Origin: Podarcis erhardii | Lineage: Eukaryota | NCBI GenBank assembly: GCA_964252035.1 | Contig: OZ176200.1 | Reading direction: 5' to 3' (one strand) | DNA: 64,000 nt | Part shown: positions 43,136 to 64,000 of the stretch, piece by piece | Position numbering within the stretch: the stretch's first letter is position 1 | Layout of the letters: every line of letters starts with the position of its first letter | Made by a program: the position numbers and the translations under genes | The notes under the pieces: model-generated | The model's database searches: none | What the model was told of the DNA's origin: nothing | The model's input: the letters and a program-made list of their open reading frames with translations, nothing else

Positions 43136-43379
43136 ATCGGGTTTCAGTATGAGTGGCACGTTAAGTGGATTGTGCCCCTATCAGCTGCACTTCAGAAAAG
43201 TTGCGCACAGAAGCCCTGCGTTTACTAACTTGTAGGCAGAAGAGTTGCACTGTTAAATGTTAAAGCAAGTCTAAAATACCGGAATTAGATCCCTGTATGT
43301 CACTCTACCTAGTGAAGTCTATGCTACCTAGCGAGTAACTGTCTCGTTCTCGCCGCTAGATGGATGTTGAAACAAAACC

Positions 43380-44150
43380 ACCGTGACCATCATGCCCTGC
43401 GGCCACGGCAAAGGGGCGGGGACTAGGACACATGCGCAGAACGCTCTTTCCTTGTTGCTATGGGAGCCTACGGCAGGGCAGCTGCTGGGAAGAGGTAGAA
43501 TCCGCGTTCTCTTTTGTTCCTCCGCTGCGACGGGGGCATTTTGGCACCTGTCGCGACTCTTTCCCGGCTGGAGTTTGCGCCGGCGGCGGCCCCTCGTTGC
43601 CATGGCGGCGGCGTTGCCTCTCGCGTGCTAAAGATGCCCCGGGAGACGGCGAGGGAGGCAGCGAGGCCTCCGCCCGGGAGGATGTCGCGTCCGCAGATCA
43701 TCCACAGCGGCCACTTCATGGTGTCGGAGCCCCACGCCGACCCGGAGCCGGACCCCGAGGCGGCCCTGAGCCAGCCAGGCCGAGGCGCCCCGCCGAGCGC
43801 GGCCGAGCGAGCCAGAAGGGCCGGCTCCGCGCGGAAGACCGCGGCCGGGAAGGCCGGTGACGGGGCCCAGCTGACCGCCGCCGCCGCCGCCGCTTACGAC
43901 TTCGACACGGTGGACGAGGCCGCGTGCCTGTGCTACCGCTACGGGCCTCGAAGCAGCGGAGCCCTCAGCATCGACCCTTCGCTCACGAAGCTCTTTGAAT
44001 GCATGACGCTCGCCTACAGGTAAGGGCGGGGCGGGCGGGGCACAGCGGACCGTGTGTGTCTGGGGGGAAATGTGGAGAGACACAGCAGGAAGGGCTAGAG
44101 AAGGGCCCGCCCGGTGGCTTCCTTTCTCTCTTCCGGCCCTTGCCTCTCGG
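43380..44150. promoter_or_regulatory. CpG island and promoter of the Mondo-family gene
   Basis: CpG-dense block over exon 1, with a GC box GGGGCGGGG at 43413-43421 and an NRF1-like CATGCGCA at 43431-43438. Confidence 0.8.
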
Positions 44151-47100
44151 GATGCATGCAGGGAACCAGACTATGCCTTGGGGTTACAGAGTGCCTGCTG
44201 TGGGAACTGCAGCACGACCAATTAGCCTGCCATTCATACGCAAGATATACTAGTATGCATGCAGATAAACGATACTCATAAGAGAATCCATCTGCAGGTA
44301 ACTTGGCATCGTTAAGTAAAAGCCTCGGATTCCTTGTAACTACAGACATAAAGGGCATTTTCACAGCTTGCCTTTGTCGCGTCTGCCAGGCCAAGTTAAA
44401 ATCTAAATGAGTGTATAAATCTAGATTTGTAGCTGCCAGTTAAGAAGTGCTTCCCTACAACCTTTCCTTCCACTTTAAGAACTTTCACTTATGGGAGGCA
44501 GGTGTGAGAACAGAGTAGTCAAGGAAGGAAACTGACATTTTAGAGTCAGAAACGCATACATCTGTTGAAACCAACAAATCCAGTTTTGTAGTTAAAAAAA
44601 AAAAAAGCAGGGGACCTAGATATGACATAGAGTTGTGCCTGGTTCTCCAGCATTCTACTACCACTTGCTTTCTGGCATAGTATTCTTTATTTATTTATTT
44701 ATTTATTTACTCACTCACTCTGGTTGCAGTTCTACACACAAGGGATTAGAATCAATGAATAAGTCTCATTGAACTCCATAGGAGTTACTTCTGAGATAAG
44801 GTGCAGAGGATTGCACTGCTGCTTATTTTACTGTATTTGCAAGGTACCCAATAGCGTCTCTAGTGGCATATGGGAATATGTTCATATAAGCACAGCATAG
44901 TAAGGTAAAGGTAAAGGTACCCCTGCCCGTATGGGCCAGTCGTGTCCAACTCTAGGGTTGCGTGCTCATCTCGCTCTAGAGGCCGTGAGCCGGCGCTGTC
45001 CGAAGACACTTCCAGGTCACGTGGCCAGCGTGACAAAGCTGCAGCTGGTGAGCCAGCACCAGCGCAGCACACGGAAACGCCGTTTACCTTCCCGCTATAA
45101 AGCGGTCCCTATTTATCTACTTGCACTTAAGAGTGCTTTCGAACTGCTAGGTGGGCAGGAACTGGGACCGAACGACGGGAGCTCACCCCGCCACGGGGAT
45201 TCGAACCGCCGACCATGCAATCGGCAAGTCCTAGGCGCTGAGGTTTTACCCGCAGTGCCACCCGCGCAGCACAGCATAGAGGAGGGGAAGTCACACTTAA
45301 CTTTAGTCTTCCCAGAAAATCATATCAGAAAAGCACATCTTGCTGCTTAGACAGTGCTTCTGACCCATACATATTACTTTGGTTTTTATCTACCCCATTT
45401 TCAGTGTATCTCATACCCCAGTTGACTTATTCAGCAGTCAAGTCCTTTAATCTTTAATCAGCTCTCAGGTCAGACTCCTTTAATGTGTGGAAGGGAGAGA
45501 CAGTCTTAAATAATAGAAATTTCTATTTGACAGAGTGTAGTGGATAGATAGTTATCATGAGTATTAAAGTGAGAAATGGACCATGACCCAAGTTGTCCCT
45601 ACCAGATGCTAGAGACATAATATCAAAAAGCTGTATGGGTTATGTGGGATTAAATATCAGAAAGTATATCTGCTTTGGTAAAGGTCTGTTTTGTCCCCTT
45701 TCTGATAGTAGTGTTGCTAAAGCATAAAAACTTGGCAAATTATATAAACAGGAAGTTTTCACAGGACAAGTATTTCTTCCTGTGCTCCCTTTAGCTTCCT
45801 AATAGAATTTTAATGTGAACTCTTGTGTACAATTTTAATGATTTATGTTAAGGAACTAATTGGCTCGTTTTGCACAGTCTAGTTTTAATTATTGTTACCT
45901 GTGCTGTACTATGTTGAAAATTAATACACGCCCTGAATTTTCTGAATTGGCTGTCCCCCTCCCCACAACATTTCTGAGAAGTAGGAGAGAAACTTGAGCA
46001 ATGAAACAAGCTGCTTAGAGAGGTAATGAAATTTGCTTCCTTGGAAACTTTCAAAGAAAGGCTGGGTGGGCAACTCTCTGGAATGTTTTACATTACTGTG
46101 CTTCAGGGCATAACTTGGACTAGATTAGGGATCAAAAACTTTCAGTCTGCTCGCTGCATATGGCACCCAGAACACTTGATTGCTGGCTGTGTGCCTCTTA
46201 AAAGTTTAGAAATTCTAGTGTTTCTTTTTTAAAGTAACATTTGACATGATTGCATAGACCATTTTGGATATGTGATGGTAAAACAACGACTCTCTTTTCT
46301 GGTTCTTGATGCCAAACAGCCTATCCTGCACTGATCTTGACCTTTGGGATTTCTCCTAGTTCTAAAAATAATTAAAATAAAAAGTACCACACTGGAACAG
46401 ACAGCATTTGTTTTAACCAGTATCCTGTTCCCAGGAATGTCTGGCCTTGATGTTAGCATATAGAGTTTTGAATTAAATAGCTGTAGTCCTTTCATATAAA
46501 AGTTGTATTCTTACCTGAGTTGCACATTCAGCGGATGCTACAGCAGTATGTTGCAGACTAGCTTCCCAATCAATATACTTGCTGCAAAATTACTGCTTCT
46601 GCCATTTTTTATGTAACTGCATGCATTTTTCCTACATTGAGATCATCTCCTTGTAAATATATATCTATGAAGCAGCTTTAAATCAAGAAAAAAAGTGTTC
46701 CGGCATTTTCAGCAACCTAGTGAACTGGAATAGATCCTCAGAACTGGGATTTTTGGGTCTGTTCTTTGAATTCCAGCATTACGACATTTCAAACATTGAC
46801 TCCTTTAGGTATTTTCTAGTTAATCTCCCACAACATTATGAGATGTCATCTTGGACTAAGCAAAAGGACAAAGGTAGTATGAGGAGTTTGAATGCCTGAA
46901 GAAATCCCCTCAACAGAGTCCTTTTTGACATTAACTTTGTCAAAAGCTCAATTTACCATATACCTGAGCCCACTGGTTTCAGTGGCAGTGCAAGCCTCTG
47001 CCCCCAGCCAGTGAAATAGACATTATATTTTGCTCAATAGTAACATAGAATCATATATTGAATCTTTGCACAGCTATGCATTAGAACTGTGACTGATCTA

Positions 47101-50100
47101 TCTGCCTGGGATTATTCTTATTCATTCTGTCTCAAGCAGGTGCAGTTTTGAATAAGAAGCTGTTGTGGCAGAACAGCAAAGGGGCATGGGTTCTGAACAG
47201 TATCTTGTTTGTTCTTTTACACAACTGTTCAGTGAAACAGCTGCCAGGTTTGAAATGTAATGGGGCAGAGTGCAATAGGGTGGCCTGAGAATGTGGTCCA
47301 ATACACTTAGTGTGAGGATTTTCATGTGGGATGTTTGTGCACCTTCACGTGAACTTCTGAAGGGCAAAATATAAGTGTGTGTTGCTACTGATTAAAAAGG
47401 GTGCTTGAGTGGAATGCAAGCTGCCAGTATCTGTCTGTATTCCTAAGGAGATGCTGGCTCATTATAATTTCTTCTCCTTCGTAAGAACATACAGATGAGG
47501 CACAGTTTTATTTTAACAGTGGAAGAAATAAACCACTGAATTAACCTTCCAAGATGTTTTTAATCATTTGGATTACTCAAGTCAATACTGTATTTTTCTG
47601 TTGTAGACAGATACACGCACTAACAAATTGGTTATTAACAGCAAAACACAAATCATTTAACTGGATGTGTTTTAAATTATGCTGCAGTTCTTCAGAATAA
47701 TTGAATTACCATAGGTTCTGTCCAGGAAATAGTTGTCCAGCACTCACTGACTCTTCGTAGATGGAGTTCTGCAACAATAATGAATGGGGAAGACCCCTTA
47801 TAGTAAGGCTGGGAGTGGGGGGTATTTCCGGATCTGCCACCTAAAGCCAGGGCTATTTTTTCTTATGTCATAATTGCCACATGGAATTCCACCCCAAGGC
47901 TGGTATCTACAGCATACTTTTTAAAAGCAAGATTTTGTCCTTTGTTGAGGAGCTTCATCAGAAAAGCAGGAAGGCAAGTATACATAGAGAGCCATGTAGT
48001 TCTGTGGGCAGAGCTTCTGTAATCAACACAGCTTCTTATCCCTATATATGGTCTATAATTATGTTCTACACTTATCAGCATATGCTACTTCTAACCTGTT
48101 CATTTTTCTCCTTCTCCCACAGTTTGCTCTAAAAAGTTGAGGAGGAATCAACATCCAGTGAGAGGTTTAGAATAAAGCAGGCATATTGGGTCAATCTGTG
48201 CAAAAGGTGAACATTTGTAGACATCTGAGTAGTTTACAGTTTATAGTTTTGAGTGCAGAATTTAGTTTTTTTGGCACAGATTAGTAATAAAGTGTGGCTA
48301 TAGAATAATCAAGCTTATTAAAGAGATGTTCCTGTTCAGTGTGTTCTTCTTCTTCGGGTTGTTGTCTGGCCCTGTTTCCCCTTGAAAGCCAGATATACTT
48401 GGTATTACAAGAGGTGGTTTTTTTTGGCTTTGTAGTGAGAAACTTGTCTCTCCCAAATGGAAAACCTTCAAAGGGCTGAAACTGCTACAGCGTGACAAGA
48501 TTCGACTCAATAATGCCATCTGGAGGGCCTGGTATCTGCAGTGTAAGTAGCCTGGAAGAAGGTATTTAAAAACAACAACAACAAAAAAAAAAACCAACCA
48601 ACCATATAAAAGGTCATCCAATATGGGCAGATTAGGTGGGAACCACCAAATTCTGTGTATAAATCCACAAAAAAATGGGTTCTTCCTCCATCCCTACACG
48701 TGTTTTCCATGACTTCCTCAACCAAGGAGACTGTTTTACACAGAATTATGTATTGCAAGTTTGCAAAGCTTTATGCTAGCAAAAGTCACATATTAATTGC
48801 TTATGGATTTAAAGCTCTTCAGCTCTACTGCCCTATTTAGTGGATGCTGAAATGGGAACGACTGCCAGCCAGCCAGCATTTTCTCTGTTTGGTCCTGCTT
48901 GAAGCTGTACTGCGGATTACAGCCCCTTTTCTTTTATTTCATTCTGGATGCAGATGTGGAGAAGCGGCAGAACCCAGTGTGCAGTTTTGTGACCCCACTA
49001 GAGTGCAGTGATGTAGATGTGCACCGCAAGCCTGAGGTGAGCAAAGGTTACTTGGGCCTTTCTTACTTAAGAACATACAAAGAAGACAGATTATGCATTT
49101 CTGTAAGTGACCCCTGGCTGCACCTTTATTTGGCAGGCTGTCATCATGGAAGGAAAGTACTGGAAACGTCAAATTGGGGTTGTCATCAGGGAATATCACA
49201 AATGGAGGTTGTTTTCCTATACCCAGGTAAGTGTCTTCTCCAGCAAGATGTGTTGTACTTCATATAGCTCCCCTTCATCCCTAGATGACATGTTCCACCC
49301 AAGCTCATACGGTCCTTTTTAGTGTCAACCAAGGAAATCAGGTAGCTCCATCCAGAAGCACCTTGGAACTCCATTGTAAGAAGGTGGATTTTCTAGATGC
49401 TTCTTGCCAGGCTATCATAGTCTGGATCTGGTGGTTATGAGGTGATCTGGAACTAGACTGGCGAGGCTACATTTCTGTCTTACTCTGATGGGTGCCTTAG
49501 CCTATAGACTCCTTTCCACAGCTGCCAAAGGCTCTCATTCTCTTGCCCTCTCTCTTACTTCCACAAAGACGCACACTGGTCACCCAGCTATCCCTGTGTG
49601 ATTATTGTGGTCTGCAATGGCTTGCTGAGGCCTCAGGTGTTCATTGTTGTTGTAGCAGTAGTAGTAATAATAATAATAATAGTACATTATACCTAGCCCT
49701 TCCTCCCAAATGTGTCCAGGGCAGCAATAAGCCAGATAGGATTTTATTTAGCTACCTATGGTTTTCCTCTAGCTAAGTATTGTAATTGTAGTACTTTCAG
49801 TGGCCTAATCCTAAACATTCTGTGCATTTTGTTATAGGCTTCAAAGAAGATGGATAAACCCGTCTATGGTTCTTCTCAGGTGCTATTTTAATGCCTTGTT
49901 CCTATACTGCACCCTCCAGATTCCCCTTTCCCCATGGCAGAGGGTGGAATTAAAAAAGCTTGGGGGTTCTCTGCAGCCATTCAGTATTCCAGCCCCTCAT
50001 TTGAGTTTGCCTAAAGTTGGAGTTCACAGCTCTTTCTCTCCCATTCTGGACAGGAAGTAGCTGATGATGTTCCAAGGGCAGAGCTGAAAACGGATGGAAC

Positions 50101-53100
50101 AGATGCAAGCCCCATGGACCTTGACCCCTTGCATGACCTGGATGCACTTCTGGACACCTTCATTTCTAGCCGCAACCCTTATGGTGGCCCCAACCTCCGT
50201 GGCCTTGGTGAGAGGCCTTGCTTTGTGCTCATTCCATCTATCCCTGGATCTGTCCCTTTCTACCAAGAAACCCTTTAAGTTTTCTCCACTGTCCCCAGAG
50301 GCTAGTACAGATGCCTCTAGAGGGTGGAGAGAGCTTTTGAAGTATCTCCATGTGAGAGCCAGTCCCTTGCTTGTGCACCAGAGAACAGTTCTTTGCTATG
50401 GAACAAAGTAGTGAGCGAGTGATATTATTTCTCATTTTGTGTCTTCAGCTCACCAGGGAAATGCAGATATGATCCAGCCCACCCTGACCCAACTGCACCC
50501 CATCTTTGGGGAGGAGTTTATGGACTTGGACCCCATTCAAGGTAACAGCAGAGGTTTATATGCCTGTACTTAGTGGTAAGGTGGCGCATCTCAAAGCTGA
50601 AAGACATCCTCTGAAGCACTTTGTATGGCTTCTTAAGACCACTTCAGACTGTGTTTAAATTATGTATCCATACTGTACACACTTAAAAGAATTCCGTTTG
50701 TTTATAAATGCTACTGGGTACATGCTGCTAGGATCTCCTGATCAGCTGCAATTCTCTGCAGTGCTTATCTGTAAAAGAGCCCTTGGATTCCTCAGAATTG
50801 CAGCTTGCATATTTACTAAACTCACTGTTAGGGAAAAAACTGAACAAAATATGAAAAGTGTGTCATTAAAGCCCAAAAATCAAATAGAAACATGTATTAT
50901 TATTATTATTTTAAGCCCACAAGTTAATCACCAGTTTTGAAATATTAACTTGTGACCTCAAGAGTAAATAACATCTGAGTCTGGGTCACCATAGTGGGCT
51001 GAAAGCTATCACTGGTGAGAGGAGACTATTTCCAACCAGGCATTGATGAAATTCTAGTTCACCCAAGGCCAGAGCAGAATGCTGCTGAGCAAACATGATA
51101 CGTCCTGGTAAGGCTAGACATTATTTAAATCAGTCAGCATGCACATAAAAATCCTCTTTTGGGCGTCCAATGCTCTAATAGACGACTCATTCTCCATATA
51201 ATCACATGCATACTGTACTTTATATATTGTTTGTCCCCTATCCCATTTTCTGAATCAGCCAGGACAAATTCTTCAGGGCCACTGTATATCCCCTTTTCAC
51301 AGGAAGAAAAAAGTAGGCAAATTAATCTTGTATGAATTCTTAATTTGAAAATCTTAAAACTTACGCATTTGTCATCTCAAAGTTTCTACTTGCAAGTATA
51401 GCATCTACATATTGAGCCTATTTCAGTCTCATTCCTGCCACTCTGTCACATAACTCTGAAATTAGCAGTCCCCACCTGCATATTGCTCGAGTTCTTGACT
51501 TGAGTTTCTCTACCAACTGGTTCAGTTGACATATCCTGGATTTTAGGTCTCATTGTTCTTCGAAACCACCAATTGATGTCTTCTTGTATGGTGGATGTGA
51601 ATGAATGAATGTTTATTATTAAGGCCAAACAGCCAGCATACTACCTGTGTGGTGAAATCCTGATGATTCTTTGCTTAATTGATTCAGACACACAAGCCAT
51701 TTATCTTCTACCAGTTGCTCTTCATCTCCTCCCAGCCATGTACCTTTTAAATCTTTGCTTTCTTTTCACAGAATTCATCACTTCCTGTCGTTCTCAGCCC
51801 ATGAGCCAGGTAAGGAGAATAATTTTATCTGATAGCTTACAAACTCCTTGGGCTTCTGCAGCCCCTGATGCTTACTGCAGATACTGGTCTGTGCTTGATT
51901 TTGATTTTGGAAAGGCAATAGCCTTTTTCAGCATTGCAAAAAAACAACAACTGAGCAGTGGGAGTTCCCCACTTGTATGATTTTCAGTGCAGCCATCTCC
52001 AGCCTGGACTCAGGAGTTGTGTTTGATTTGCACTCTCTTCTCCCCCCTCTTAGGCTCCTGCAGTAACGGATGCTAGTGCTTTGAACCAGTGCAACTCAGA
52101 TACACCTCTCATTGCCCCTGGGACCAAGGATCTCCCACCGCCTGGAGACTCTCTCAACCCCATTCCCATCTCACTGGATGTGGAGCCGCCTGTACCTTTG
52201 AATGGACAGCAGACCTTCCTGCCATTCTTCCCCACCTCCCCACTGAGGATCAGCCCGCCGCCTGTCTCTCCCATCTTGCGCATGCAGCCTCAAACCACTT
52301 TGGTCTTCTCTGTCATCACGCACACAGGATCAGAAACAAATTCTCCGTCTGTATTTCGGGACACTTTTGCTGTGCCAGTCTCTGCTCCTCCACCCAAGGA
52401 TGGGAAATGCAGACACCTGCAACGGATTGCTCCAGCACCCTCCTCTAGCCAGCAGCCAGCCCTTCCCGGTGCTCCGCTCCCCTGCCTGCTTGCAACTGGT
52501 ATGTCCCTGCAAGGACAGGCTCTCCGTAGGGGAAATTGAGGTATTGCTGACCTAGACTACAATGCTTCTCTAGGTCCATTTGGAGTTTTAAGTCATACTG
52601 CAGAATTCTCCTTTCTTTTTGGTTGTTGTTTTCTGAAGCAAATCTCACCAGGATCAACTTTTGGAATCCCTAATTTAAACAACTGCATGCATTATTAGTG
52701 TTTATTTTGATATAATTATCTGAAGCTGGAGTTTAGCTTCATACTTGGGAATCACTGGAAGCAAAAGCATTTTTCTGTACTGGAAAAATAAAATATGTGG
52801 TCCAGGGAGATAGTTTTTTGTGTTACTGCAGAATTTTAAAATTATATACAGCGGTACCTCGATTTTCGAATGTAATCTGTTCCAGAAGACCATTCGAGTT
52901 CTGAAACATTCGAAAACCGAAAACTCAGTATAGAATTTTTTTGATGTGGTTTATTTATTGTTTATGACTTTTGTAATTACCGTATTTTTCGCCCTATAGG
53001 ACACAATTTTCCCCTTCCAAAAATGAAGGGGAAATGCGTGTGCGTCCTATGGGGCGAATGCAGGCTTTCGCTGAAGCCTGGAGAGCGAGAGGGGTCGGTG

Positions 53101-56100
53101 CGCACCGACCCCTCTCGCTCTCCAGGCTTCAAGAGAGCCGCAGCGCCAGTCCCACAAGGTCAGGGGACAGCGGGGAGGCAGAACGCCGCCATCCTGCTGT
53201 CTCCCGATGTGGTTTGGAGGCTGACGGCGGGGAGATGCGTGCTTCTCCCGGCCGCCAGCCCCGCAAGCTCCGGGGACAGCGGGGAGGCGCAGCGCGTCCT
53301 CCCGCTGTCCCCGGACCTGATCTGCAGGCGGGCGGCGGGGAGAAGAGCGCTTCTCCCCGCTGCCGGCCCCACAAGCGCCTGGGGGGGAAATAATTTTTTT
53401 TTCTTTATTTCCCCCCCAAAAAACTTGGCGCGTCCTATGGGCCGGTGCGTCCTATGGGGCGAAAAATACGGTATGTAAATCTTGTTATGCTGTAAGCCGC
53501 CTTGAGCATTGTTTTTTTAACTGTGGAAAGGCGGCATACAAATAAAAAAAAATGATGATGAAGAACTGAGTATGGAAAACTCAATACGGAAGCCGTGTGG
53601 CATGTTCGACTTCTGAGGCATATTTGAAAACCGAAGCATTTATTTTTGGGTTTCTGGCATTCAAAAACTGAAATGTCTGTCAATGGAGATGTTCAAAAAC
53701 CAAGGTACCACTGTATCTGACTTGAGCTGATAGGCATTACGTAACAGTGCCTGTATCTCCTTCAGTGGATTTAGGGTTTAGCCTTGCAGAAATTGTGTGT
53801 CAAAACTATGTACTGACTAGTCTGTAGAATAGTAAAATGGTTAGTCCACAGGTATTGGAGACGGATTTAAGGTGGCAATCTTACTTGCAACTATACATAT
53901 GTGTAAAGATGTCTGGGAGCTGCTGTTTGGAAAGGGAAAGAAAAAGTCCTCTATGCCCAGATTCCTGCTTTGATCCCCTTCTTGCTTCTCTGGAGTGTAG
54001 TTAAGCTTTTCGTTTCGATGCAGCCAGCAGTTTGAGCCAGGTAAATCAAGCAGAACTACAAATGTCAACATTCGTCCAAATGCTTCATAGTTAAACAGAA
54101 AACCTTCAACTCATTAGTAGAAGTGAAATGACAGCTCATTAATATAACTATGCATATTTACTAGCTTTTTAAAGTTATATTTTAATTTTTCTTAGATCTA
54201 CAAGTGAGCACAGATTTTCTTGACCCATTTCAGAACAAGGCTCTTGTGCCTTGTAGCTTTTTTGAATGGGGAAATTTGTCAAGAGCTGTAGAGTCTTCTA
54301 ATGTGCAAGCATTATGAAGAGAGAATCTGTAACTATGAAACTTTCCTCTCTACTCCATTTAAAACTCACACATAAAGGTCCAGAATTCCTATGTGTGTCT
54401 GATGGCAAAGTGGGTACCAAACAGTTGGTGTCAGATTGGCTGGTACATGCAGGAATTTTATGACACTAATGGTTATGGGGAAACCAGGCCTAGGTATGTT
54501 TTGGAAGGGATCCCTGAGGCAAGGATGCTCATTGGCCTCTCTGTTGGGTAGGGTGCCATGCATTTAAGTAGAGATTATTGGCCTGAATTGTATTTTCAGT
54601 TGTGGTGGGTGGGATTTCATAAAGCAGCAGACTCCTTTTTGTGGGAAAATGATTGCTTGTACATGAGAGCATGAGCAAAGTTCTTATTGTTACAGGGTGA
54701 TTTCATAGCTAGAAGCATCCTTGGAGCATGAACAGCGCGTGAACAGCTCGTGCTGTCCTATATGATTGGCTAACGTGGCATGGCCTGATGCTCGCATGGT
54801 CTAGTGCGAAGGTCCTTATCTGCTTGCTAGAACAAATTGCTTGGCTTGTACTTTGTATCTTTCTGATTTCACACAATAAAAGCTGTGCTGCATGAGCCCT
54901 AGAGGCAGCTATATTTCGGAACCTATTATGGTGTGAGACTGATTTTTCCTTGGATGCCGAGCTGCAACTCGACACCTTTTCATTAAATAAATTCTGCCAC
55001 ATTCAAAAACTTGGTCTACTGGTGAGCAGCTAAACTGAAGCTGTGTAGTTACAGGGAGTGAGTGATGCTGCTTCAGCCAGCCAAGTTTTGTACATGCATT
55101 GGGGGTTAATACATAGAGGCTGGGAAAATAAGAACATCTCTTTCATCTCTAGGTCCTGCCCCACTGCCCCTCACTCCAGTCATGAACTCTGTGCAGGTAA
55201 GGATGCTCTCCTCTGCCACCTTCCTTCTGCGAGGCCTTCTATCTCTGTTCTGCTTTTTGCCTCCTTGGAGTTGACAGGCAGCGTATTTTTCTATCTTTCT
55301 TTTTAGCTGCTCTTTCTTTCTCTCAACCCTGCTTTTCCTCTCCCACAGGTGTGTGGGGTCCCAAAGCCCCCTGTGAATATGCTGAACTCATTCTCGGCAA
55401 CGGTGAAGTCTCCTCCACTTGCCTCTGCTGCTGCTTCCCCTGACACTGGTAAGCTGGCTCAGGAGGGTGCAAAGTCACTCGGCCTCTCTTCTTAGCAATA
55501 TCTCATCCGCTTTCACTGGATTGGTCTATATGCCGTGCCAAAGTAGAAATTGAATACACACCTTAAGAGGAACTCACCTACCCCAGTATTTTTTGGATTA
55601 TTTCAGGTGCCAAAACCAAGGAGAGAGCTGAGGACAACGCTCTCTGCAAACCCCAGGAAGTGGACAAATGCTGTACTGCCAAGGTAATAAGAATACCCAC
55701 ACCACTGTACCCCATCTTGTTGGCTTGAGCGTTGTGGGAGAAGACATCTTTTCTCAAAGATGATAGCCAAAGGGGTAGTTGCCTGGCAGTGTCTCAAATC
55801 ATGGCTTGATTGGCTCTTGCAGGGAAGTCGCAGATCAACACTTACCTCGGCTGACTATGCCCGCCGTAGGGTCATCAGCTCCGGCTTCAATACCCTTGCC
55901 ACTCTGGTGTTGACAGGACCTGATCAAAGCAGCACTAAGGTACGCATCCCCCACTGTACCAGAGGATGGAAGGGCACATATTCTTTGCTGTTTGTCCAGT
56001 CCTCCCAATTTGCTTTGTGTACCTGCTGGAGCCATTCTTGTGGTCTTTGCCCTCCCAATCCATTTTACACCTTTACTCCACCCCCTCACCTCCCCAGTTC

Positions 56101-57374
56101 AGCAAAGCAATGCTCCTGCAGAAAAGTGCGGCACATGTGGAAAGACTGCAGCAAGAGCGCCGACAAGCTCAGGAGACAGTTGAAAGACTACGTGGGGAAA
56201 TCAAAGAGCTGAGCACTGCCATTGAGTGAGTTGCGGGGCTGGCTTAAGGGGTTTTCATTGGATCAGGGATACAAGTTAAAAGGTGAGAGGGGAACTCTGT
56301 CAACAAGTTGTGGCTTTTCTCTTCCCTCCAGTGACTTTCAGCGCCAGCTTCCACCTACGGGAGCTCCTGTGCTGCCACCACAGTCAGGTCAGGCTTCTCA
56401 ACTCTATGAAGAGTATGTCCGCAAGCGCACCCTGCAGGACTGGCGCTTCTGGCTTGTATCCACCACTGAGCATGTGGGGTGGGGTGGGATGGGACAGGTT
56501 AGGGTGCAAGAAAGCAGCAAGGGGAGGTATTTGGCATGGCATCAGTGGCTTGCTGGGTGCTTAAGGGGAGCAGGGAGACTTGGCTGCATAGGCTCCTTAA
56601 CCTCTTCCAACCTGCAGTTCAGCATGGTGATTAAACCACTCTTTGAGAGCTACACCAGGACAGTGAGCACAGGCAATGTCAAGGAATTCTGCGACTCAGT
56701 GTTGAGCTGGTTGGAGCAGCACTGCACCCTGCCCATCTTGCGCCCTGGTATGGATCAACAAGGAAATCTAGAAATGTCTTTCCCTTCACTGACCCATCTC
56801 TTTCCCCCCCTATGGCTTTCAATGATCCTTGCCTACCTTCTAGTACGTGCTTGTGTATCATTCACCTATCTTACTCCTGCTTGAAGTACTCTTACGTTCA
56901 CACATAACTAAGAGAGTGGAGCAGAACCATGGCTTACCAATTATACTCCACATTCCCGATTCCCTTTTCATGCCTTGCTAAGTTACTAGACACAATTGCC
57001 CATCACTATGATCCTTTCCTTGCCCTGAAGCAAGATTATTGGACAGTGCCTTAAAGCAAGGCCCAGATGTGACCTTAGGAGTTACCTGGCTTTGTGGTGT
57101 TTAGGAAAAAATCTAGCTGGAGATGCCAGCTGTTCTCACAAGTCTTCTATTCCTGATACTTCCAGAAGACTTGAAAGGATTCTCTTTCTAGGAATTAGGA
57201 GAAAGTGTCTGCATTGAGTTCACTGTTACTGTTTTGGTTTTTTGTCCCACAGCTATCTCTGGCTCCCTCCTGCAGCTAAGCAAGATCACATCCATACTGA
57301 CTCGGCCAACCCAGTTGCGTGAACAAGCCCTGCAAGCAGTAGCTGGCCCTCCACACTACAAGAGCAACAGCTAG
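43634..57374 (+). CDS. Mondo-family bHLH-ZIP protein (MLX-interacting protein / ChREBP-like); probable third paralogue distinct from MLXIP and MLXIPL; 17 exons, 743 aa from ATG 43682 or 759 aa from ATG 43634
   Basis: join(43634 or 43682..44019,48436..48542,48954..49036,49137..49226,49838..49879,50054..50207,50449..50541,51772..51809,52054..52498,55153..55196,55349..55448,55607..55683,55823..55939,56098..56225,56332..56455,56618..56747,57253..57374), open frame to TAG. Motifs: MCR I QIIHSGHFMVS, MCR II SIDPSLTKLFECMTLAYS, MCR III RDKIRLNNAIWRAWYLQY, MCR IV EGKYWKRQIGVVIREYHKWR, MCR V GNADMIQP, HLH-ZIP SKAMLLQKSAAHVERLQQER, DCD RTLQDWRFWLFSMVIKPLFESY...WLEQHCTLPILRP. Exons 8-12 (low-conservation Pro-rich region) were inferred mainly from splice sites and phase, so they are less certain. 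Confidence 0.93.
44901..45267 (-). mobile_element. Full-length Sauria SINE
   Basis: The minus strand has a tRNA-derived head GCGCGGGTGGCACTGCGGGTAAAACC...GGTTCGAATCCCC and an (ACCTTT)n 3' tail. A perfect 12-bp TSD AGCACAGCATAG lies at 44889-44900 and 45268-45279. Confidence 0.92.
46003..46140 (+). mobile_element. CR1 LINE 3' fragment, diverged
   Basis: GAGAGGTAATG...CCTTGGAAACTTTCAAAGAAAGGCTGG...CTCTGGAATG...TTGGACTAGAT, matching the CR1 ORF2 end and 3'UTR pattern. Confidence 0.6.
52849..53713. mobile_element. Tc1/mariner (Tigger/pogo-like) MITE carrying two nested insertions
   Basis: TIRs CAGCGGTACCTCGATTTTCGAA / TTCAAAAACCAAGGTACCACTG, flanked by TA at 52847-52848 and 53714-53715. Confidence 0.8.
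52980..53471. mobile_element. Young Tc1/mariner (pogo/Tigger-like) MITE, innermost of the nested set
   Basis: 23-bp TIRs CCGTATTTTTCGCCC(T/C)ATAGGAC with 1 mismatch, a TA TSD at 52978-52979 and 53472-53473, and a GC-rich interior with palindromes. Confidence 0.88.
56456..56617 (+). other. U12-type (minor spliceosome) intron in the Mondo-family gene
   Basis: 5' splice site GTATCCAC, and a perfect U12 branch site TCCTTAAC at 56594-56601, 16 nt before the end of the CAG acceptor. Confidence 0.8.
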
Positions 57375-58744
57375 GATGAAGACCAGGTCCAGTGCTATAT
57401 GGACATCCTCACACACTACCAGGAAAGCCAGCAGCAGGGACGTCTATCTCAGGAATTCATTTGCCATGCAACAAAGAAGCTTATGTTAGACAGTATTGGG
57501 GTTTAGATTGCCAGAGCAGAGAATCTCTGAGTATTCATTTTGGTGCTGGACACCTCTTAATACTCTCTCTCTCTCTTTTTGCAGAACTTCAGGTAGTAGA
57601 GTGGGGGATGTGGGGGATAAGGCAAGACACAGAGCCAGAATGCAGATTTAATTGCCAGATATAGGATGCCAGCCATGGCTTTAGCCTCTTTCAGAACTGG
57701 GGTGAAAGATTAGCCACATAAGAATTAGTGTGGCCTCCATTTCCTGTGTTTTCCCACCAGAGGGCAGTGAGAGTGATTCTTGCAGGCCTTCTCAATACGT
57801 ATGATTCGTGGCTTTGTTCCTCACTAAATTTGAGTGTTTGTGGCTAAGTGTCCCGCCCCCTCATATGCAGTATATGTTGATGGCAGATTTTACCTATTCA
57901 ACCATACCCATGACTCCTTTCTGGGGTGTAGAGGATCAATTTCTCCCATCTTTCATTTTAGCTCAGAGACCTTTTGTAGGACACTGTATTTTCTGTAGAT
58001 CTGCTGAATTTTTACAGGGGGTGGAATCTGACTTCAGCTCAGTATTTGATGGTGTGATGATACTCTTTGCTCTGAGGATTGTACCTTCAGTGTACTGCAT
58101 AGACTATGCCTGCCATTCTCCATCTCCTATGCTCATGTTTCTTTTCTCAAGTTACATATTAGCTTGGCGTGGAATCTGGAGTTTATTTATGCACAACACA
58201 TCCTGTACTATGTTTGCCAAACTTTGTTCTAGGCTCCCAGCTAATGTACAACTCTTGACATCTGACCACAAGGAGGTTGTGTGATGGGGAAGACACCACC
58301 TTACCACTGATAGGCAACCTGTTCTGTCTCGATTGCATAACCTTCTGCAAATGGCAATACCTCATTCCAAACTCCCAAGTTAGTCATAAAGCTAATGTCT
58401 ACAGGAACAGGAGTCTAGCTGACTAAACTAGGGAAAAGGTTTTTTTTACCTTTTCCAGAGTTTTGAGTAGTATCTGAAGTAGCTCTGGACATTTTGGCAC
58501 CTGATAAGAGAGAATCCAAATGTCAGACCTCTATCCCCCCACCCCACCCCACCCTCCCCCAGTTAACAGGTACAACCATTGAAACAAGCAGGAACTGTGG
58601 CGGTGCATAGATCCTTTTCATTCCTGATGGGTAAACTCTATAGCTTTATCTTTCATTACCAGATGAAAGCCTTTGATGATCGGAAATTGTTCTAACTGCT
58701 TGTGTACAAGATATTCTAATACTTATGTGTCCAGAAATACACGA

Positions 58745-58804
58745 GAGAAAGAGTTGGAAGGGACCACGAGGATCATCTAGTCCAACCCCTTGCAATGCAG
58801 GAAT
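58745..58804 (-). mobile_element. CR1 LINE 3'-end fragment
   Basis: GAGTTGGAAGGGACCACGAGGATCATCTAGTCCAACCCCTTGCAATGCAGGAAT; same tail as 13795-13857. Confidence 0.75.
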
Positions 58805-59868
58805 CTCTCACCCAACGTGGGGCTCCTTGTTGAGATCTGGCCTAGGTGTGCGTGGTTTTCTTTTCTTTTTACTGATTTATTACTTCTTTATTCTGCTACA
58901 GGCCCAAAACTTTCAGCAACAAAACCAAAAAAGCTATTCTATTATCCTATAGGAATATAGTAATAGTATGGCAGTTTTCCATCAGCCACTTTAACCAAGG
59001 AATGGGCAACTGATTGATTCCCATGGGAGACTCACCTCAATATACAAAATCTACTTCAAGCCCATGTGTGCTTTCAGTCTGTGGGATGTTATATGTCCCT
59101 TTTCTGTATCTCTTTTACTCATGAATGATGGTGGTGCTTTTTAAGAGTCTGCATTAGCTGAAGTTAATGCACAATACAGCTGACCCTTTCACTGTTCAGC
59201 ATGGGAGGTTTACTGCAGAAAAGACTTCCAGTGCTTGCTCACCTAGATGTAATTACTGATAGCACTTTACTTCCTCCAGTCCTGTAGGATTTCTTCAGTT
59301 AACGTGTATTCAAAAACGAATGAGAGCACACATGAACTATGAATTCTATCTTGAAAAATATTCAGTGGACCATTTGAGATTTCTTGTGTTTCTATATCAT
59401 TTTGTAATTTTAGCACTATTTCTGTATGTTCCACATATGTCACTAAAATACATTTGAGTAATCTTTAAGCGTTGTTTTCCTTTTTCACAATTCAGAAACT
59501 CCACTCTTTTCATACATGTAGGCAGCTGCCAGCCTTTGGCCAAACTGCAAAAGCACCTGCTGAGCTTTGCAGTTCCATCTTTCAAAAGCACCCCACATCC
59601 AACCTCTGCCCAGCCATCCCCACTTCTAAGGCCTAGGAATAGCCAAACAGCACTTCAGTTGTGGGGGGGGGGGAGGGCACACTATTCAGTTATTCATAGT
59701 ACTACTCAGCTGGGCAGCAGGCAGGGAAGTATGCAGTAGTGGTGCTTTGTGTGGTGGTGGGGTTGAAGAGTCTGTACATCTTCCTTGAGCAGGGTGGGGA
59801 GAATAATGTGTCACAAACTATTCAGATGTGGCCCCATTGACACATGTAGCTGTTAGATGTGCAAGTGT

Positions 59869-59874
59869 TTTATT
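59869..59874 (-). promoter_or_regulatory. Candidate polyadenylation signal of POLD4
   Basis: TTTATT on the + strand (AATAAA on -), about 380 nt past the POLD4 stop codon. Confidence 0.5.
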
Positions 59875-60255
59875 TCTCAGTCAATTAACTTGAAAGCCAA
59901 TTCAACAAACCAAGCAAGTTTGCAAAGGGCACACAACAGTAAAATAAACAGGATGCAGTGCCATACTAAGCTTGGCTTCCAAGAACTAGTCACCTAGTTT
60001 TTGGGATTCTTTTCCCCAGCACAGCATATTGATCCAAATCAATCCTCACCTTCATTTGACCTCAGCCATCTAAGTACTCCCTAAGAAGCTTTGATTAGGG
60101 CCAGAGCCCATAAGCGGAGACCAGCTGGTAGACCTTGGCATCTTTTTAGGGTTCTTACATCCAAACACAGAATCTCCATGATAGGAATGAAGGAGTTATC
60201 CAATAATGTCAAAACTCAGGGACTTCTCAGGCTGAGATACCATCACATTTTCCTC

Positions 60256-63200
60256 TCAGAGGCAATATCCATGCCACAGGCTGCAAGGGAAGCATATGGA
60301 ACATGGTTACTGCCTGAAAGAATCCTGACTTGGCATCTTACATGCCTCCTCCACCTACTGTGCCAAACAGCAGGCATGGGCAGCACAACAGCAGCAATGG
60401 TGCATGTTTTACAGTCAGTAAAAGCAAATGATCTGTGCGGAGGCCGCAGCTCTCAGCTTTCAATTCTAGGAAGTCATTGGCCAGAGAGAAGGTGGCGAGT
60501 AGGAAAAGGAATACATAGGAAGGAAGTGGCGGAAAGGATAAGTGGGAATACCTGCTACTGAATGTGTCCATATTTCTTACATGTAAGCCTTTTTAACCCT
60601 TTAAAATTTTCATTGGGCCCTGAGCTGCTTTCAGAGACTCTAGTGAGCATAAGAATGATGGACCAAAGTCATGTCTGGATGTGAGACAATGAGGCCCCAT
60701 GTAAGCTACTCGGTGCTTCCTAAAGCAAGTAAACTGTAAATACATACTAAGGCTTCAGTGCTCAATGCTTCAAATGGAGTCATAGTAAATGCTGTGGGTT
60801 GGAAGTACAGCAAAGGTGAAGCAAAAATCTCATTCTTCGGCAAGGTTCTCACACAACATGCAAGCTGACTGCCAAATGTCAACTTCGTAAGCGCCTCTGC
60901 TTCATGAAAATCTTGGCCACTAGGACTTCCTACCATGAAATGGCCAGGACAGTCTACCAAACACCCTGGCGGAAGCTGCAAATAAAGGCGAACTGCTTGT
61001 TCTTGGCTATTGATCCCTTTCCTATTCTAATCCCCAATAGGTGAGTTATGGATTTTACTTGACCTTTGCTGAGCTCATACTTCCATTTGCCCAGTTCATT
61101 TTGTGTATTACCTCTTGCAATAGAGTTACTCCTCATTCATACAGTTGTGAATAAAAGATGCCCAGAGCTTAGCCAAATTATCATGTGACCTGCTTAACAC
61201 TGCCATGGCCTTGCATCACCAAGCCCAACCTCAATAGTCTTCCTCTTCCAGATAGATCTCATTACCTTAGAATAGATGCTTCCATCCAGTGCCTAAGAAG
61301 GACAGAGCAGCTTTTCCACACTAACCTGTATGTAACGAGAGGGTCCTTGTTGTGCTTCTCTAGCAATTCCCTCACCATAGCAGGGGGGTTGAGACCCAGT
61401 AACTCTGCCCTCTCCCAGCGCTGCAAACGGGTGATTCCTGTTAGGGGGGAAAAAAGGTCTCTCAAAGTGGCCTCTTCAACACCAGCGATCTTGAACCATC
61501 TTCCTTGCAAGTCTATTTCTGCTGGATGAACTTGAGAATTAACTAGGAGTCCCCTTTTCCTGGTATGCTGCCACTAATTACAATGTAACACTTTAACAGA
61601 GCATAGGGAGACTGGTCCCTGCCCCCATCAAAGTATATCTAAAATTGTGCATGGAGGGAGGCAGGGAAAACCTATGCTTTCATTGCAGTGATTCAGCTCA
61701 GTTGTAGTAGCAGCATGATTGGAAGTTCTTACCTGTACAGGGGCCGTACTGCCAGCTGAGGTCAAATTGCTTTAGTGTCTCCAGCTGGTCTGGACGTGCA
61801 GCATCTTGGACTTCCTGGACTGTCACTGCGTCTGATCAGAGAGAAATGGATGATTATCACCGCATTATGGAGAGCCCTTGTATGAAATGAGTGTGCAGGA
61901 AAGGCTTAACATAATTCATTAGCCAACACCATTACATTAGTTATCTCTGGTTTGCTCTACAACCAGTATAACTCTTCCTGTGTTTTCTTTAGCATCTCTT
62001 CACCCACACTTCAATCTCATGTAAATATGAACACACACAACATGTGCTGACTGAAGAAAACAACACTAACATAATTAATCCATTGCTCATTGAGAATGCT
62101 CCTCTTCTGTGGAGGGTTCCCCACCTTTTGGGAGTATATGTTTCATATAATTTTACTTCCTGCTAAATGATTTTTCAGATACTTTACTTTCACAGCAATC
62201 CTGTGAAAGCTAAGCAAGTGGCAAGCCTATTACTGATTAACCCTCACTTGCATAACCGTGGTATTGAGTTATGTGCAGATCCAACAAACAACCTAGGAGA
62301 CGACCAAAGCAAGACCATGCAGGGAAAGAGTTTGCAAGAACTGATGTCTTGCAAATCTCAAGGCCAACTCCATTGGGCATCCATCTACTCCCCACCTAAA
62401 GCTGCTGGATTTTCACACTTTCCCCCAGTTCAGATTATCTACCTATTGGTAGCAGAGGTATCACCTTGCCGTGGTGAGTGGGCTTGCACATGCCTATGAC
62501 CCATATGAGCAAAGCCGACAGGAGTCTCGTACTCCCAACAGAGTCACCCAAGGTGGCAAGGTCAAAGGGAAGGAGCTAGACAAAGAAAGATCCAAGAAGT
62601 CCTCAACAACAGAGCAGGCGGCAGATAACAAGTGACATGTTACATCGGCTGTGAAGGCAGATGAAGGCTGCAGCAGATAAGATAGAGCCTTACTGCGAAG
62701 ACTGCTTTGGTCAGCGTGCACTGATCTACACACATGAAACAAATTCACACACAAGCATCTTCCAAAAACCCATACCAAACCCAAACCCATAAAACTCCCA
62801 TGGTGATTGGCAAATGGTAACGGTATCTCCAAAAACTTTTACACATCACTTGGGAAGACAGGTGAACTAATGCTGGTGTACTGGTAGACGCAAAGATCAC
62901 CAGTGTTGAAGCAATGATTCTTCAGCATCAACTACATTGGACTGGTCATGTGCGGATGCCTGATTATCGTCTTCCAAAGCAACTACCCTATTCCAAACTT
63001 AAAAATGGAAAGCGTAATGCTGGTGGTCAACCAAAGAGGTTTAAAGACTCCCTTAAGGCAAATTTTTAAAAACGTAGTATAAAAACTGACAATTGGGAAA
63101 CACTGGTCTGTGAGCGCTCCAACTGGAGAACAGCCTATACCAAAGGTGTCATGGACTTTGAAGATGCTTGAACTCACATTAAGAAGAAGACACATTTGGC

Positions 63201-63623
63201 AAACCCTCACCATGATCAAATCCCGCCTAGAAACCTATGTTTCCACTGTGGAAGGATGTGTGGATCCAGAATTGGCCTCACAGTCACTTACAGACTCACT
63301 GTTAAGATTGTGTTCATGGAAGACAATCTTACTCGGCTACGAGAGATCACCAAAGAAGAAAAAGGATTTACGGGAGCACGACCAAATCGGTTGCACTGGG
63401 CACGGAACCTTGGGGGTGCCGCAGGGAATGCTGAAAGTATGATTTAGAATGAAGTTAGGGGTGCTAAATTTTGGTGTCGCAACAGGTGCTGCTGAAATTC
63501 ACGCATCCCTTCCTAGCAATACTCACCATGGAGCGGGCTCTGAGCCTTCTTTGTTTCCTTACTGTCTCTTTTCCTCTTCTTCACCACTTGGAAGGAGTCT
63601 GTGATTAGCCGTTTCCTGCCCAT
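60256..63623 (-). CDS. POLD4: DNA polymerase delta subunit 4 (p12), 4 coding exons, 110 aa
   Basis: complement(join(60256..60280,61326..61437,61733..61831,63527..63623)) = 333 nt. Protein: MGRKRLITDSFQVVKKRKRDSKETKKAQSPLHGDAVTVQEVQDAARPDQLETLKQFDLSWQYGPCTGITRLQRWERAELLGLNPPAMVRELLEKHNKDPLVTYSLWHGYCL*. It has the N-terminal PIP-degron KRLITDSF...K and the family signature FDLxWQYGPCTGITRLQRW. An acceptor at about 63665 indicates a further upstream non-coding exon. Confidence 0.97.
62844..63363 (+). mobile_element. 5'-truncated RTE-clade LINE in POLD4 intron 1 (antisense to POLD4)
   Basis: Translates ITWEDR*TNAGVL...LHWTGHVRMPDYRLPKQLPYSKLKNGKRNAGGQPKRFKDSLKANF*, then a C-terminal zinc-knuckle remnant CFHCGRMCGSRIGL, and ends in a GAA-rich tail. 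Confidence 0.8.
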
Positions 63624-64000
63624 GGTTCCATGTGGCAACGCTCACAGAGCATTAACAGGTTGCTCTAAACAAGGAGCTGAGGAGAAGCAGAGACTGTTAG
63701 ACAAGCTGCTGACTAGGACCTTCAATCTCCAAACCTACTGTCCTAACACCAGCTACCAGTCAAAACGACTTTATTTCTGGGAGAAAAAACTCCGCAAAAA
63801 GGTGTCTGGACTCTCCTAGCTGATGGCCTTCTCCCATGTGGAAGTTCTTTGCTTCCAAACACATTAAAGAGCCTAAGTTTATGTAAAGGAGAAGGAAGTA
63901 TATTTTGTGCACGGTCAGAGACCCTACACTCTTTATAAATGCCTTTGCATTTTCCAGGACTGTGTGTCGATACTGAAAAATTCTCAGCCCGATTCCAAGG

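What the first reader, a model, noticed from the sequence alone, without database searches (positions are those of the whole stretch)
55823..55939. Mondo-like protein has lost its E-box-reading residues: a candidate Id-like, DNA-binding-dead MLX decoy
Seen in sequence: exon 13 encodes GSRRSTLTSADYARRRVISSGFNTL, which aligns without gaps to ChREBP ENRRITHISAEQKRRFNIKLGFDTL. His5 is Leu (55841-55843), the near-invariant Glu9 is Asp (55853-55855), and QK is YA; Arg12 and Arg13 are kept. Helix 2 and the zipper (FSKAMLLQKSAAHVERLQQERRQAQETVERLRGEIKELSTAIE) and the DCD/WMC MLX-interaction domain are intact, and the whole frame is open. Established: in Max/USF/Pho4-class bHLH-ZIP proteins the His5-Glu9-Arg13 triad reads CACGTG, and Glu9 is required for CANNTG recognition. 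Inference: the protein probably still dimerises with MLX but cannot bind ChoREs normally. It could act as an inhibitor or sink that tunes MondoA, ChREBP or Mxd/Mnt output, or it could have a new DNA specificity. I know of no such negative arm described for the MLX network. The RRST PKA-type site (the ChREBP basic-region Thr equivalent) is retained.
Basis: partly seen in the sequence, partly recalled or inferred. Interest (0 to 1): 0.9.

Follow-up and report, generated by a model that had tools for sequence, protein, structure and literature searches.

The report
Third Mondo paralogue, remodelled DNA-reading head
This lizard gene is a third relative of the sugar-sensing transcription factors MondoA and ChREBP, not found in mammals, that has replaced the residues which normally read the E-box but still keeps that segment under selection, so it probably redirects or damps sugar-responsive transcription rather than duplicating it.

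Summary
Exon 13 (55823-55939, AG/GT-flanked) encodes a bHLH basic region with Leu at position 5 and Asp at position 9, where 63/66 and 66/66 other Mondo sequences have His and Glu.

It is not an assembly error or a private variant. Same-species contigs are identical, related species differ only synonymously, and RNA contigs splice the exon as modelled.

The gene has 17 coding exons (43634-57374) and an open 759-aa frame. It belongs to a third vertebrate Mondo clade found in squamates, tuatara, turtles, a crocodile, ratites, caecilians and salamanders, next to an SSH-like gene. Two evolutionary studies of the family report only two paralogues.

Across 36 distinct clade sequences, position 9 is Asp in 35, position 5 is Phe or Leu in 31, and Arg12-Arg13 are invariant. 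Lys11 and Lys17 are also lost.

The gene is under purifying selection (omega 0.33), and so is the remodelled basic region (omega 0.16, against 0.73 just upstream). This points to a re-tooled head more than a discarded one.

MLX pairing and DNA binding remain untested. I class it as a new variant of a known kind, of moderate to high interest.

The parts
43634..57374 (+). Whole coding span of the third Mondo paralogue: 17 coding exons and a 759-aa open frame.
   Evidence: Spliced model built against the Zootoca protein P0171. All introns are GT-AG. Orthologues in nine other species also map as 17 blocks.
43634..44019 (+). Exon 1, carrying MCR I (IIHSGHFMVS) and MCR II of the N-terminal glucose-sensing module.
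   Evidence: MCR I is 75-87% identical to ChREBP and MondoA.
48436..50541 (+). Exons 2-7, carrying MCR III (the 14-3-3/NES region), MCR IV and MCR V.
   Evidence: Omega for MCR I-V is 0.10.
55823..55939 (+). Exon 13: remodelled basic region, helix 1 and most of the loop.
   Evidence: RNA joints at both ends.
55841..55843 (+). CTT, Leu at basic position 5 (His in canonical Mondo proteins).
   Evidence: Clade: F25/L6/S2/P2/H1 of 36. Other Mondo: H 63/66.
55853..55855 (+). GAC, Asp at basic position 9 (the E-box-reading Glu in canonical bHLH proteins).
   Evidence: Clade: D35/N1 of 36. Other Mondo: E 66/66.
55862..55867 (+). CGC CGT, the retained Arg12-Arg13.
   Evidence: 36/36 in the clade, with synonymous codon turnover CGC/CGG/CGA/CGT.
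56098..56225 (+). Exon 14: end of the loop, helix 2 and the leucine zipper.
   Evidence: joints 55939/56098 and 56225/56332. Omega is 0.07 for helix 2 and 0.15 for the zipper.
56332..57374 (+). Exons 15-17 (56332-56455, 56618-56747, 57253-57374): the C-terminal DCD/WMC domain and the stop codon.
   Evidence: 46-50% identical to ChREBP and MondoA. Omega 0.21. RNA joint 56747/57253.

Best explanation
This is a functional, transcribed member of a third vertebrate Mondo paralogue group, equal in rank to MondoA and ChREBP. Early in its history, before amphibians and amniotes split, its DNA-reading helix was re-tooled rather than discarded. The changes are His5 to Phe/Leu, Glu9 to Asp, Gln10 to His/Tyr/Cys, Lys11 to Ala/Thr/Val and Lys17 to Ser. 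Arg2, Ser7, Arg12, Arg13 and Ile16 were kept.

Shown here: the changes are clade-wide. The segment is under purifying selection. The glucose-sensing N-terminus and the HLH-zipper-DCD dimerisation module are strongly constrained.

Inferred: the protein still pairs with MLX through its HLH-zipper-DCD. It can no longer read the CAC half-site in the canonical Glu9/His5 way. It still lies on DNA through Arg12-Arg13 and backbone contacts. The heterodimer would then have one canonical head (MLX) and one altered head. It would bind asymmetric or non-ChoRE sites, or bind ChoREs weakly, and as a by-product it would compete with MondoA and ChREBP for MLX.
For: - Clade-wide substitutions against 66 canonical Mondo sequences.
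- A separate clade with 100/100 support and a long stem of 0.56, whose internal branching follows the species tree.
- Conserved synteny with an SSH-like gene, and with POLD4 in emu.
- Omega is 0.33 for the gene, 0.10 for the MCRs, 0.07 for helix 2, 0.15 for the zipper and 0.21 for the DCD.
- Omega for the basic region is 0.16, and 0.14 for positions 1-8 alone. Both differ significantly from 1. The adjacent linker has omega 0.73, not significantly different from 1.
- NG86 dN for the basic region is 0.15-0.34. The linker gives 0.33-1.65 and the rest of the HLH-zipper 0.07-0.22.
- Arg2, Ser7, Asp9, Arg12 and Arg13 are held through synonymous codon changes.
- The best-conserved basic-region positions (2, 5, 9, 12, 13, 16) include the canonical DNA-contact positions 5, 9, 12 and 13. 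That they lie on one helical face is my inference.
- RNA contigs from two related species splice the exons as modelled.
- A Myc/Max heterodimer with a Glu32Lys Max head still binds the E-box (bioRxiv 10.64898/2026.04.01.715400).
Against: - No binding data exist for any member of this clade.
- Glu9 is treated as essential for E-box recognition (Max contacts described).
- Net positive charge is reduced. Only 3 Arg remain in iguanian and snake sequences, which the plant rule of thumb would call non-DNA-binding.
- Pfam's HLH model matches only from profile position 12. It scores 23 bits, against 39-42 bits for MondoA and ChREBP.
- Constraint on the segment could come from a role that is not DNA binding, such as nuclear import, phosphorylation or a protein partner.
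- The omega estimates rest on 8-15 codons and 10 taxa, with saturated dS.
Confidence: 0.45

Rival explanations
1. An Id-like MLX sink. The protein dimerises with MLX but the heterodimer does not bind DNA. It therefore titrates MLX away from MondoA, ChREBP, Mxd and Mnt, possibly gated by glucose through its intact N-terminal module.
For: - His5, Glu9, Lys11 and Lys17 are all lost.
- The Pfam HLH match skips the basic part.
- Engineered basic-region mutants of ChREBP (R673A/R674G) and of Mlx block the glucose response (PMC1761440).
- The rule of thumb counts proteins with few basic residues and no Glu as non-E-box or non-DNA binders.
- The HLH-zipper-DCD and the MCRs are conserved.
Against: - A dead head should drift, but the basic region has omega 0.16, against 0.73 next door.
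- Asp9 is 35/36 and Arg12-Arg13 are 36/36 over the time since amphibians and amniotes split.
- The retained Arg pair is exactly what the engineered dominant negative destroys.
- True Id proteins are small and lack a basic segment. This protein is 759 aa with a full sensor module.
Confidence: 0.3
2. Function is essentially unchanged. Asp9 substitutes for Glu9 well enough, and the protein is a redundant or tissue-specific ChoRE activator.
For: - Asp keeps the carboxylate, and Arg12-Arg13 are retained.
- ChoRE E-boxes are imperfect and are bound cooperatively by two heterodimers (PMC1761440).
Against: - Glu9 is 66/66, His5 is 63/66, and Lys11 and Lys17 are nearly invariant in all other Mondo proteins from invertebrates to mammals. 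The third clade changed all of them together on a long stem branch.
- The shorter Asp side chain is not expected to reach the CA bases (established bHLH-DNA structures, my own knowledge; Max contacts).
Confidence: 0.1
3. An artefact, a private variant or a decaying pseudogene.
For: - The emu copy is more degenerate: Asn9, Arg1 and Arg2 lost, and a long branch.
- No orthologues turned up in mammals, neognath birds, frogs or fishes.
Against: - Independent contigs of the same species and of related species agree.
- The frame is open, with 17 exons, in all ten taxa mapped.
- Omega is 0.33, with strongly constrained domains.
- Spliced RNA contigs exist.
Confidence: 0.02

Closest known systems
MondoA (MLXIP)
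   Same: It has 17 coding exons and the N-terminal MCR I-V. MCR I is 87% identical and MCR II 68% identical to Polypterus MondoA. It also has the bHLH-zipper and the C-terminal DCD, which is about 50% identical.
   Different: It forms a separate clade with 100/100 support. The basic region lacks His5, Glu9, Gln10, Lys11 and Lys17. Its loop has ChREBP-like length. It evolves faster and lies next to an SSH-like gene instead of the MLXIP locus.
ChREBP (MLXIPL)
   Same: Same domain plan. MCR III is 83% identical to turtle ChREBP. The loop has similar length and also ends in Lys-x-Ser-Lys-Ala (KFSKA here, KVSKA in ChREBP).
   Different: The basic region is remodelled. Hemicordylus capensis carries both a ChREBP (P0244) and this paralogue (P0161), so the two are not the same gene. 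The PKA-type Thr in the basic region is kept only in some squamates.
Engineered dominant-negative ChREBP (R673A/R674G) and dominant-negative Mlx
   Same: Both are full-length dimerising proteins with a disabled basic region. They block the glucose response in hepatocytes (PMC1761440). This is how the decoy model would work.
   Different: The engineered lesion removes Arg12-Arg13. The natural protein keeps exactly those residues and changes the base-reading His5 and Glu9 instead.
Id/Emc class HLH inhibitors
   Same: They are dimerisation-competent HLH proteins without a canonical DNA-reading head (my own knowledge).
   Different: Id proteins are small and have no basic segment. This protein is 759 aa, keeps 3-5 Arg in the segment, and holds it under purifying selection.
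Class I bHLH-PAS proteins (AHR, HIF-alpha, SIM) paired with ARNT
   Same: One partner lacks Glu9 and the other is canonical, and the heterodimer reads an asymmetric site that is not a palindromic E-box (my own knowledge, not tested here). This is the closest analogue for the altered-specificity model.
   Different: They belong to an unrelated bHLH subfamily with PAS domains, and their DNA binding is demonstrated. Here it is only inferred.

Membership tests
Mondo family (MondoA/ChREBP type) | N-terminal Mondo conserved regions MCR I-V (the glucose-sensing module) | tested here: met
   All five were found and aligned. Identity to ChREBP or MondoA is 60-87%, except MCR II against ChREBP. Omega is 0.10.
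Mondo family (MondoA/ChREBP type) | bHLH-leucine zipper | tested here: met
   Pfam HLH scores 23.0 bits on the 98%-identical Podarcis protein (cut-off 20.7), but only from profile position 12. The AF2 model shows helix 1 and a long helix 2-zipper.
Mondo family (MondoA/ChREBP type) | C-terminal DCD/WMC domain | tested here: met
   phmmer with the exon 15-16 frame finds 363 Mondo-type proteins. The domain is 46-51% identical to ChREBP, MondoA and amphioxus Mondo.
Mondo family (MondoA/ChREBP type) | Gene structure of 17 coding exons | tested here: met
   The ancestral 17-exon structure is reported in PMC4766361.
Mondo family (MondoA/ChREBP type) | Canonical basic region His5 ... Ala8-Glu9-Gln10-Lys11-Arg12-Arg13 | tested here: not met
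   The window has Leu5, Asp9, Tyr10 and Ala11. Across the clade it is D35/N1 at position 9. Other Mondo proteins have Glu9 in 66/66.
Mondo family (MondoA/ChREBP type) | Obligate heterodimerisation with MLX and binding to ChoRE/CACGTG | not testable with these tools
   No complex modelling or binding assay was available. No Mondo or MLX structure turned up in the PDB search.
MondoA or ChREBP orthology group | Falls inside the MondoA or the ChREBP clade | tested here: not met
   The careful ML tree gives three separate clades, each with 100/100 support, in an unresolved polytomy with lamprey.
Id/Emc-type HLH inhibitors | No basic segment ahead of helix 1, with that region unconstrained | tested here: not met
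   Arg12-Arg13 are invariant, Arg2 is 31/36, and omega is 0.16 against 0.73 in the upstream linker.
Id/Emc-type HLH inhibitors | Forms heterodimers that do not bind DNA | not testable with these tools
   This needs EMSA or SELEX with MLX.

The most novel reading that the evidence does not exclude
The protein is a natural, glucose-gated negative arm of the Mondo/MLX network. It is a full-length Mondo sensor whose heterodimer with MLX cannot engage ChoREs. Rising glucose-6-phosphate would then recruit an MLX sink alongside the activators and set the gain of sugar-induced lipogenesis in amphibians and reptiles. This control layer would have been lost in mammals.
Probability: 0.3. Interest if true: 0.75.

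Novelty: new variant of a known kind. Interest (0 to 1): 0.6.

Why it matters
The Mondo/MLX system is the main transcriptional sugar sensor of animals. Two evolutionary studies (PMC3177325, PMC4766361) describe exactly two vertebrate Mondo paralogues.

A third paralogue has been kept since before amphibians and amniotes split, with an intact sensor and dimerisation module but a re-tooled DNA-reading head. That implies either a second sugar-responsive regulon with a different DNA code, or a built-in attenuator of MLX availability, in ectothermic tetrapods.

Either way it is a natural experiment on what the His5-Glu9 head contributes in a Mondo-MLX heterodimer. It is testable in Anolis or axolotl, and it bears on how mammals rewired glucose-to-lipid control after losing the gene.

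The gene models already exist in public annotation as 'MLX-interacting protein-like'. The novelty lies in recognising the clade and its altered head, not in the gene prediction.

Tried and rejected
- **Assembly error or private variant.** Rejected by the contigs of four runs and by 36 distinct orthologue sequences.
- **Pseudogene.** Rejected by the open 17-exon frames, by omega and by spliced RNA contigs.
- **Pfam on exon 13 alone.** This gave only a sub-threshold HLH hit (13.3 bits). The full-length orthologue passes.
- **Literature searches for a third Mondo paralogue.** They found nothing. The term 'MondoC' matched only author names.
- **Search for experimental Glu-to-Asp data in bHLH basic regions.** It gave nothing directly usable.
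- **The look-up of encoding contigs.** It failed for two isoform proteins, P0168 and P0196.
- **tblastx of the emu downstream flank against window 57375-64000.** No POLD4 match, so the POLD4 neighbour is shown only for emu.
- **PDB sequence search.** No Mondo or MLX structure. The best hits were Tye7 and Mad.
- **AF2 monomer model of the bHLHZ-DCD part.** Mean pLDDT was 68.9. It shows the expected helices but says nothing about DNA binding. Foldseek against the PDB with that model gave no significant match.
- **The first IQ-TREE parsing.** It missed omega because the value is written in the log file, not the report.
Full report
**Observation**

Window 55823-55939 on the + strand is a clean internal exon. 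AG precedes it and GT follows it. It translates to a 39-residue peptide beginning GSRRSTLTSADYARRRVISSGFNTL. The codons in question are CTT (Leu, 55841-55843), GAC (Asp, 55853-55855) and CGC CGT (Arg-Arg, 55862-55867).

HMMER aligns this stretch to the Mad chain of PDB 1NLW with Leu opposite the basic-region His and Asp opposite the Glu. The same register follows from 66 distinct MondoA, ChREBP and invertebrate Mondo sequences.

**The gene**

I used the Zootoca vivipara protein P0171 as a guide to build a model of 17 coding exons from 43634 to 57374. All introns are GT-AG, and the open frame is 759 aa. The product is about 96-98% identical to lacertid proteins that NCBI names 'MLX-interacting protein-like'. 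The window therefore comes from a lacertid lizard.

The protein has the following parts:
- MCR I-V of the Mondo glucose-sensing module. MCR III is 83% identical to turtle ChREBP.
- A bHLH-zipper.
- The C-terminal DCD, which is 46-50% identical to ChREBP and MondoA.

Upstream in the window lie an ANKRD13-family gene and a slingshot-type dual-specificity phosphatase exon. In the emu locus the orthologue sits between an SSH-like gene and POLD4.

**Not an artefact, and expressed**

Logan contigs of a same-species run cover 55100-57400 in one piece, with no difference in exon 13. DNA of a related species and RNA-library contigs of two other related species differ in the exon only at 55891 and 55894, both third-position synonymous changes.

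The RNA contigs carry the joints 55448/55607, 55683/55823, 55939/56098, 56225/56332 and 56747/57253. These are exactly the modelled exon borders. Tissue and species names are coded, so I can say nothing about where the gene is expressed.

**A third Mondo clade**

An exhaustive phmmer search with the exon 15-16 frame found 363 Mondo-type proteins. Word-indexed searches with the Phrynocephalus and axolotl orthologues listed named members:
- many squamates
- tuatara
- turtles
- a crocodile
- ostrich and emu
- three caecilians
- two salamanders

A careful ML tree (35 sequences, 726 columns) gives three vertebrate clades: ChREBP, MondoA and this one. Each has 100/100 support, and they form an unresolved polytomy with lamprey. 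The third clade has a long stem (0.56), and its internal branching follows the species tree (the quick tree agrees).

Hemicordylus capensis has both a ChREBP and a member of this clade. I found no members in mammals, neognath birds, frogs or fishes. Those searches have limited reach, so this is 'not found', not 'absent'.

The two evolutionary studies I could read state that vertebrates have only two Mondo paralogues (PMC3177325; PMC4766361). A 2025 paper says the same for mammals (PMC11900861). My tree and the emu synteny agree with that note.

**The basic region across the clade**

| Basic position | Third clade (36 distinct sequences) | Other Mondo proteins (66 distinct sequences) |
|---|---|---|
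| 5 | F25, L6, S2, P2, H1 | His 63 |
| 9 | D35, N1 (emu) | Glu 66 |
| 10 | His, Tyr or Cys (33 of 36; Gln 2, Arg 1) | Gln 62 |
| 11 | Ala, Thr or Val | Lys 66 |
| 12-13 | Arg-Arg 36/36 | Arg-Arg 66 |
| 17 | Ser 33 | Lys 63 |

Leu and Asp are therefore not peculiar to this lizard. They are part of a coordinated, ancient remodelling of at least five DNA-contact positions. Amphibians and amniotes share it.

Pfam's HLH model reflects the change. The lacertid protein scores 23 bits and matches only from profile position 12. ChREBP scores 41.7 bits and MondoA 38.5 bits, both including the basic part.

**Selection**

I fetched nine orthologous loci and mapped their exact proteins onto the DNA. Eight map as 17 blocks; the partial Chelonia protein maps as 11. 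I then fitted a GY codon model on the species tree.

| Partition | Omega |
|---|---|
| Whole gene | 0.33 |
| MCR I-V | 0.10 |
| Helix 2 | 0.07 |
| Zipper | 0.15 |
| DCD | 0.21 |
| Linkers and central region | 0.54 |
| Basic positions 1-13 | 0.16 |

The gene is clearly functional.

The key result concerns the basic region:
- The likelihood-ratio test for positions 1-13 against omega = 1 gives p about 1e-8.
- Positions 1-8 alone give omega 0.14, p about 8e-7.
- The 40 codons just upstream give omega 0.73, not significantly below 1.

The codon alignment shows why. Arg2, Ser3, Ser7, Asp9, Arg12 and Arg13 persist through repeated synonymous changes.

Pairwise NG86 dN gives the same ranking: MCRs, then HLH-zipper, then basic region, then linker.

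Three caveats apply. Only 8-15 codons and ten taxa were used. dS is saturated on deep pairs. The F1X4 frequency model is simple.

Relative to MondoA and ChREBP, where the basic region is nearly invariant from invertebrates to mammals, the segment is relaxed. It is not drifting.

**Mechanism**

It is established that Glu9 accepts hydrogen bonds from the C and A bases of CANNTG, that Arg13 reads the central G, and that Arg12 salt-bridges a phosphate. The Max contacts are described in the preprint read. The rule that Glu is essential for E-box binding, and His-Glu-Arg for G-box binding, is quoted.

It is shown here that this clade lacks Glu9 and His5, keeps Arg12-Arg13, and holds a new consensus (Arg2, Phe/Leu5, Ser7, Asp9, Arg12, Arg13, Ile16) under selection.

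My inference is that these conserved positions lie on one helical face, the one that faces DNA in canonical bHLH proteins. The face would then still be a working interaction surface with new chemistry. The most likely reading (about 0.45) has four parts:
- The protein still pairs with MLX.
- It still lies on DNA.
- It no longer reads the canonical CAC half-site, so it redirects the heterodimer or weakens its binding.
- As a side effect it competes for MLX.

A Myc/Max heterodimer with one Glu32Lys head still binds an E-box. One altered head therefore need not abolish binding.

Engineered basic-region mutants of ChREBP and Mlx are dominant negative (PMC1761440). Charge is reduced, and some lineages keep only three Arg. 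The decoy model does not explain why Asp9 and Arg12-Arg13 are invariant, and the engineered dominant negative destroys exactly the Arg pair that nature kept here.

Unchanged ChoRE binding (about 0.1) and an artefact or pseudogene (about 0.02) are unlikely.

None of MLX pairing, DNA binding or transcriptional effect could be tested here. The PDB search turned up no Mondo or MLX structure. The AF2 monomer model shows the expected helices (helix 1 from basic position 7, helix 2-zipper, and a five-helix DCD) but says nothing on DNA. Foldseek with that model found nothing.

**Comparison, novelty and verdict**

By architecture the protein is a Mondo-family member. It fails the family's canonical basic-region feature and belongs to neither the MondoA nor the ChREBP orthology group.

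It works either like the E9-less partners of ARNT, which read asymmetric sites (my own knowledge), or like a dominant-negative ChREBP. It is not an Id-type protein.

The gene models are public under automatic names. I found no paper that recognises the clade or its altered head. I class it as a new variant of a known kind, with interest about 0.6. Its functional meaning is open but directly testable, and the gene was not found in mammals or in frogs, fishes and neognath birds.

Noticed in passing
window 56456-56617 (intron 15): This 162-nt intron is stop-free and in frame with exons 15 and 16 in the window. RNA contigs of both related species run through it, and no 56455/56618 joint was listed. 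In those species it carries indels that are not multiples of three (5 left out, 1 put in). It therefore looks like a commonly retained intron inside the DCD, not coding sequence.
   Followed up: partly
window 3799-12117 and 39406-39627 (+): Two upstream neighbours lie on the same strand. One is an ANKRD13-family gene (Ank repeat and ANKRD13_C hits). The other is a slingshot-type dual-specificity phosphatase exon (DSPc, 1.9e-22). In the emu locus the orthologue is flanked by an SSH-like gene and POLD4. I found no POLD4 match in window 57375-64000 with the short emu flank.
   Followed up: partly
L008 (emu) and P0210/P0211: The ratite copies sit on a long branch with odd composition. The emu protein has Asn at position 9, has lost Arg1 and Arg2, and carries an extra segment just before the bHLH (885 aa). 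No neognath bird orthologue was found. The gene may be decaying in birds.
   Followed up: no
window 43432-43600: A conserved upstream reading frame (MRRTLFPCCYGS...) matches the N-terminal extension annotated in Zootoca isoform X2. In the window it lies in a different frame from the main ORF. The extension may be a conserved 5' leader or uORF, or an annotation artefact in one species.
   Followed up: no
window 62866-63444 (+): Stop-free stretches here resemble the C-terminal part of a retrotransposon ORF (…HQLHWTGHVRMPDYRLPKQL…). This is probably a LINE-type remnant downstream of the gene.
   Followed up: no
window 20001-22000 and 42001-44000: These are GC-rich blocks (0.59 and 0.54, against about 0.45-0.48 elsewhere). 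The second overlaps exon 1 of the Mondo gene and is probably its CpG-rich promoter.
   Followed up: no
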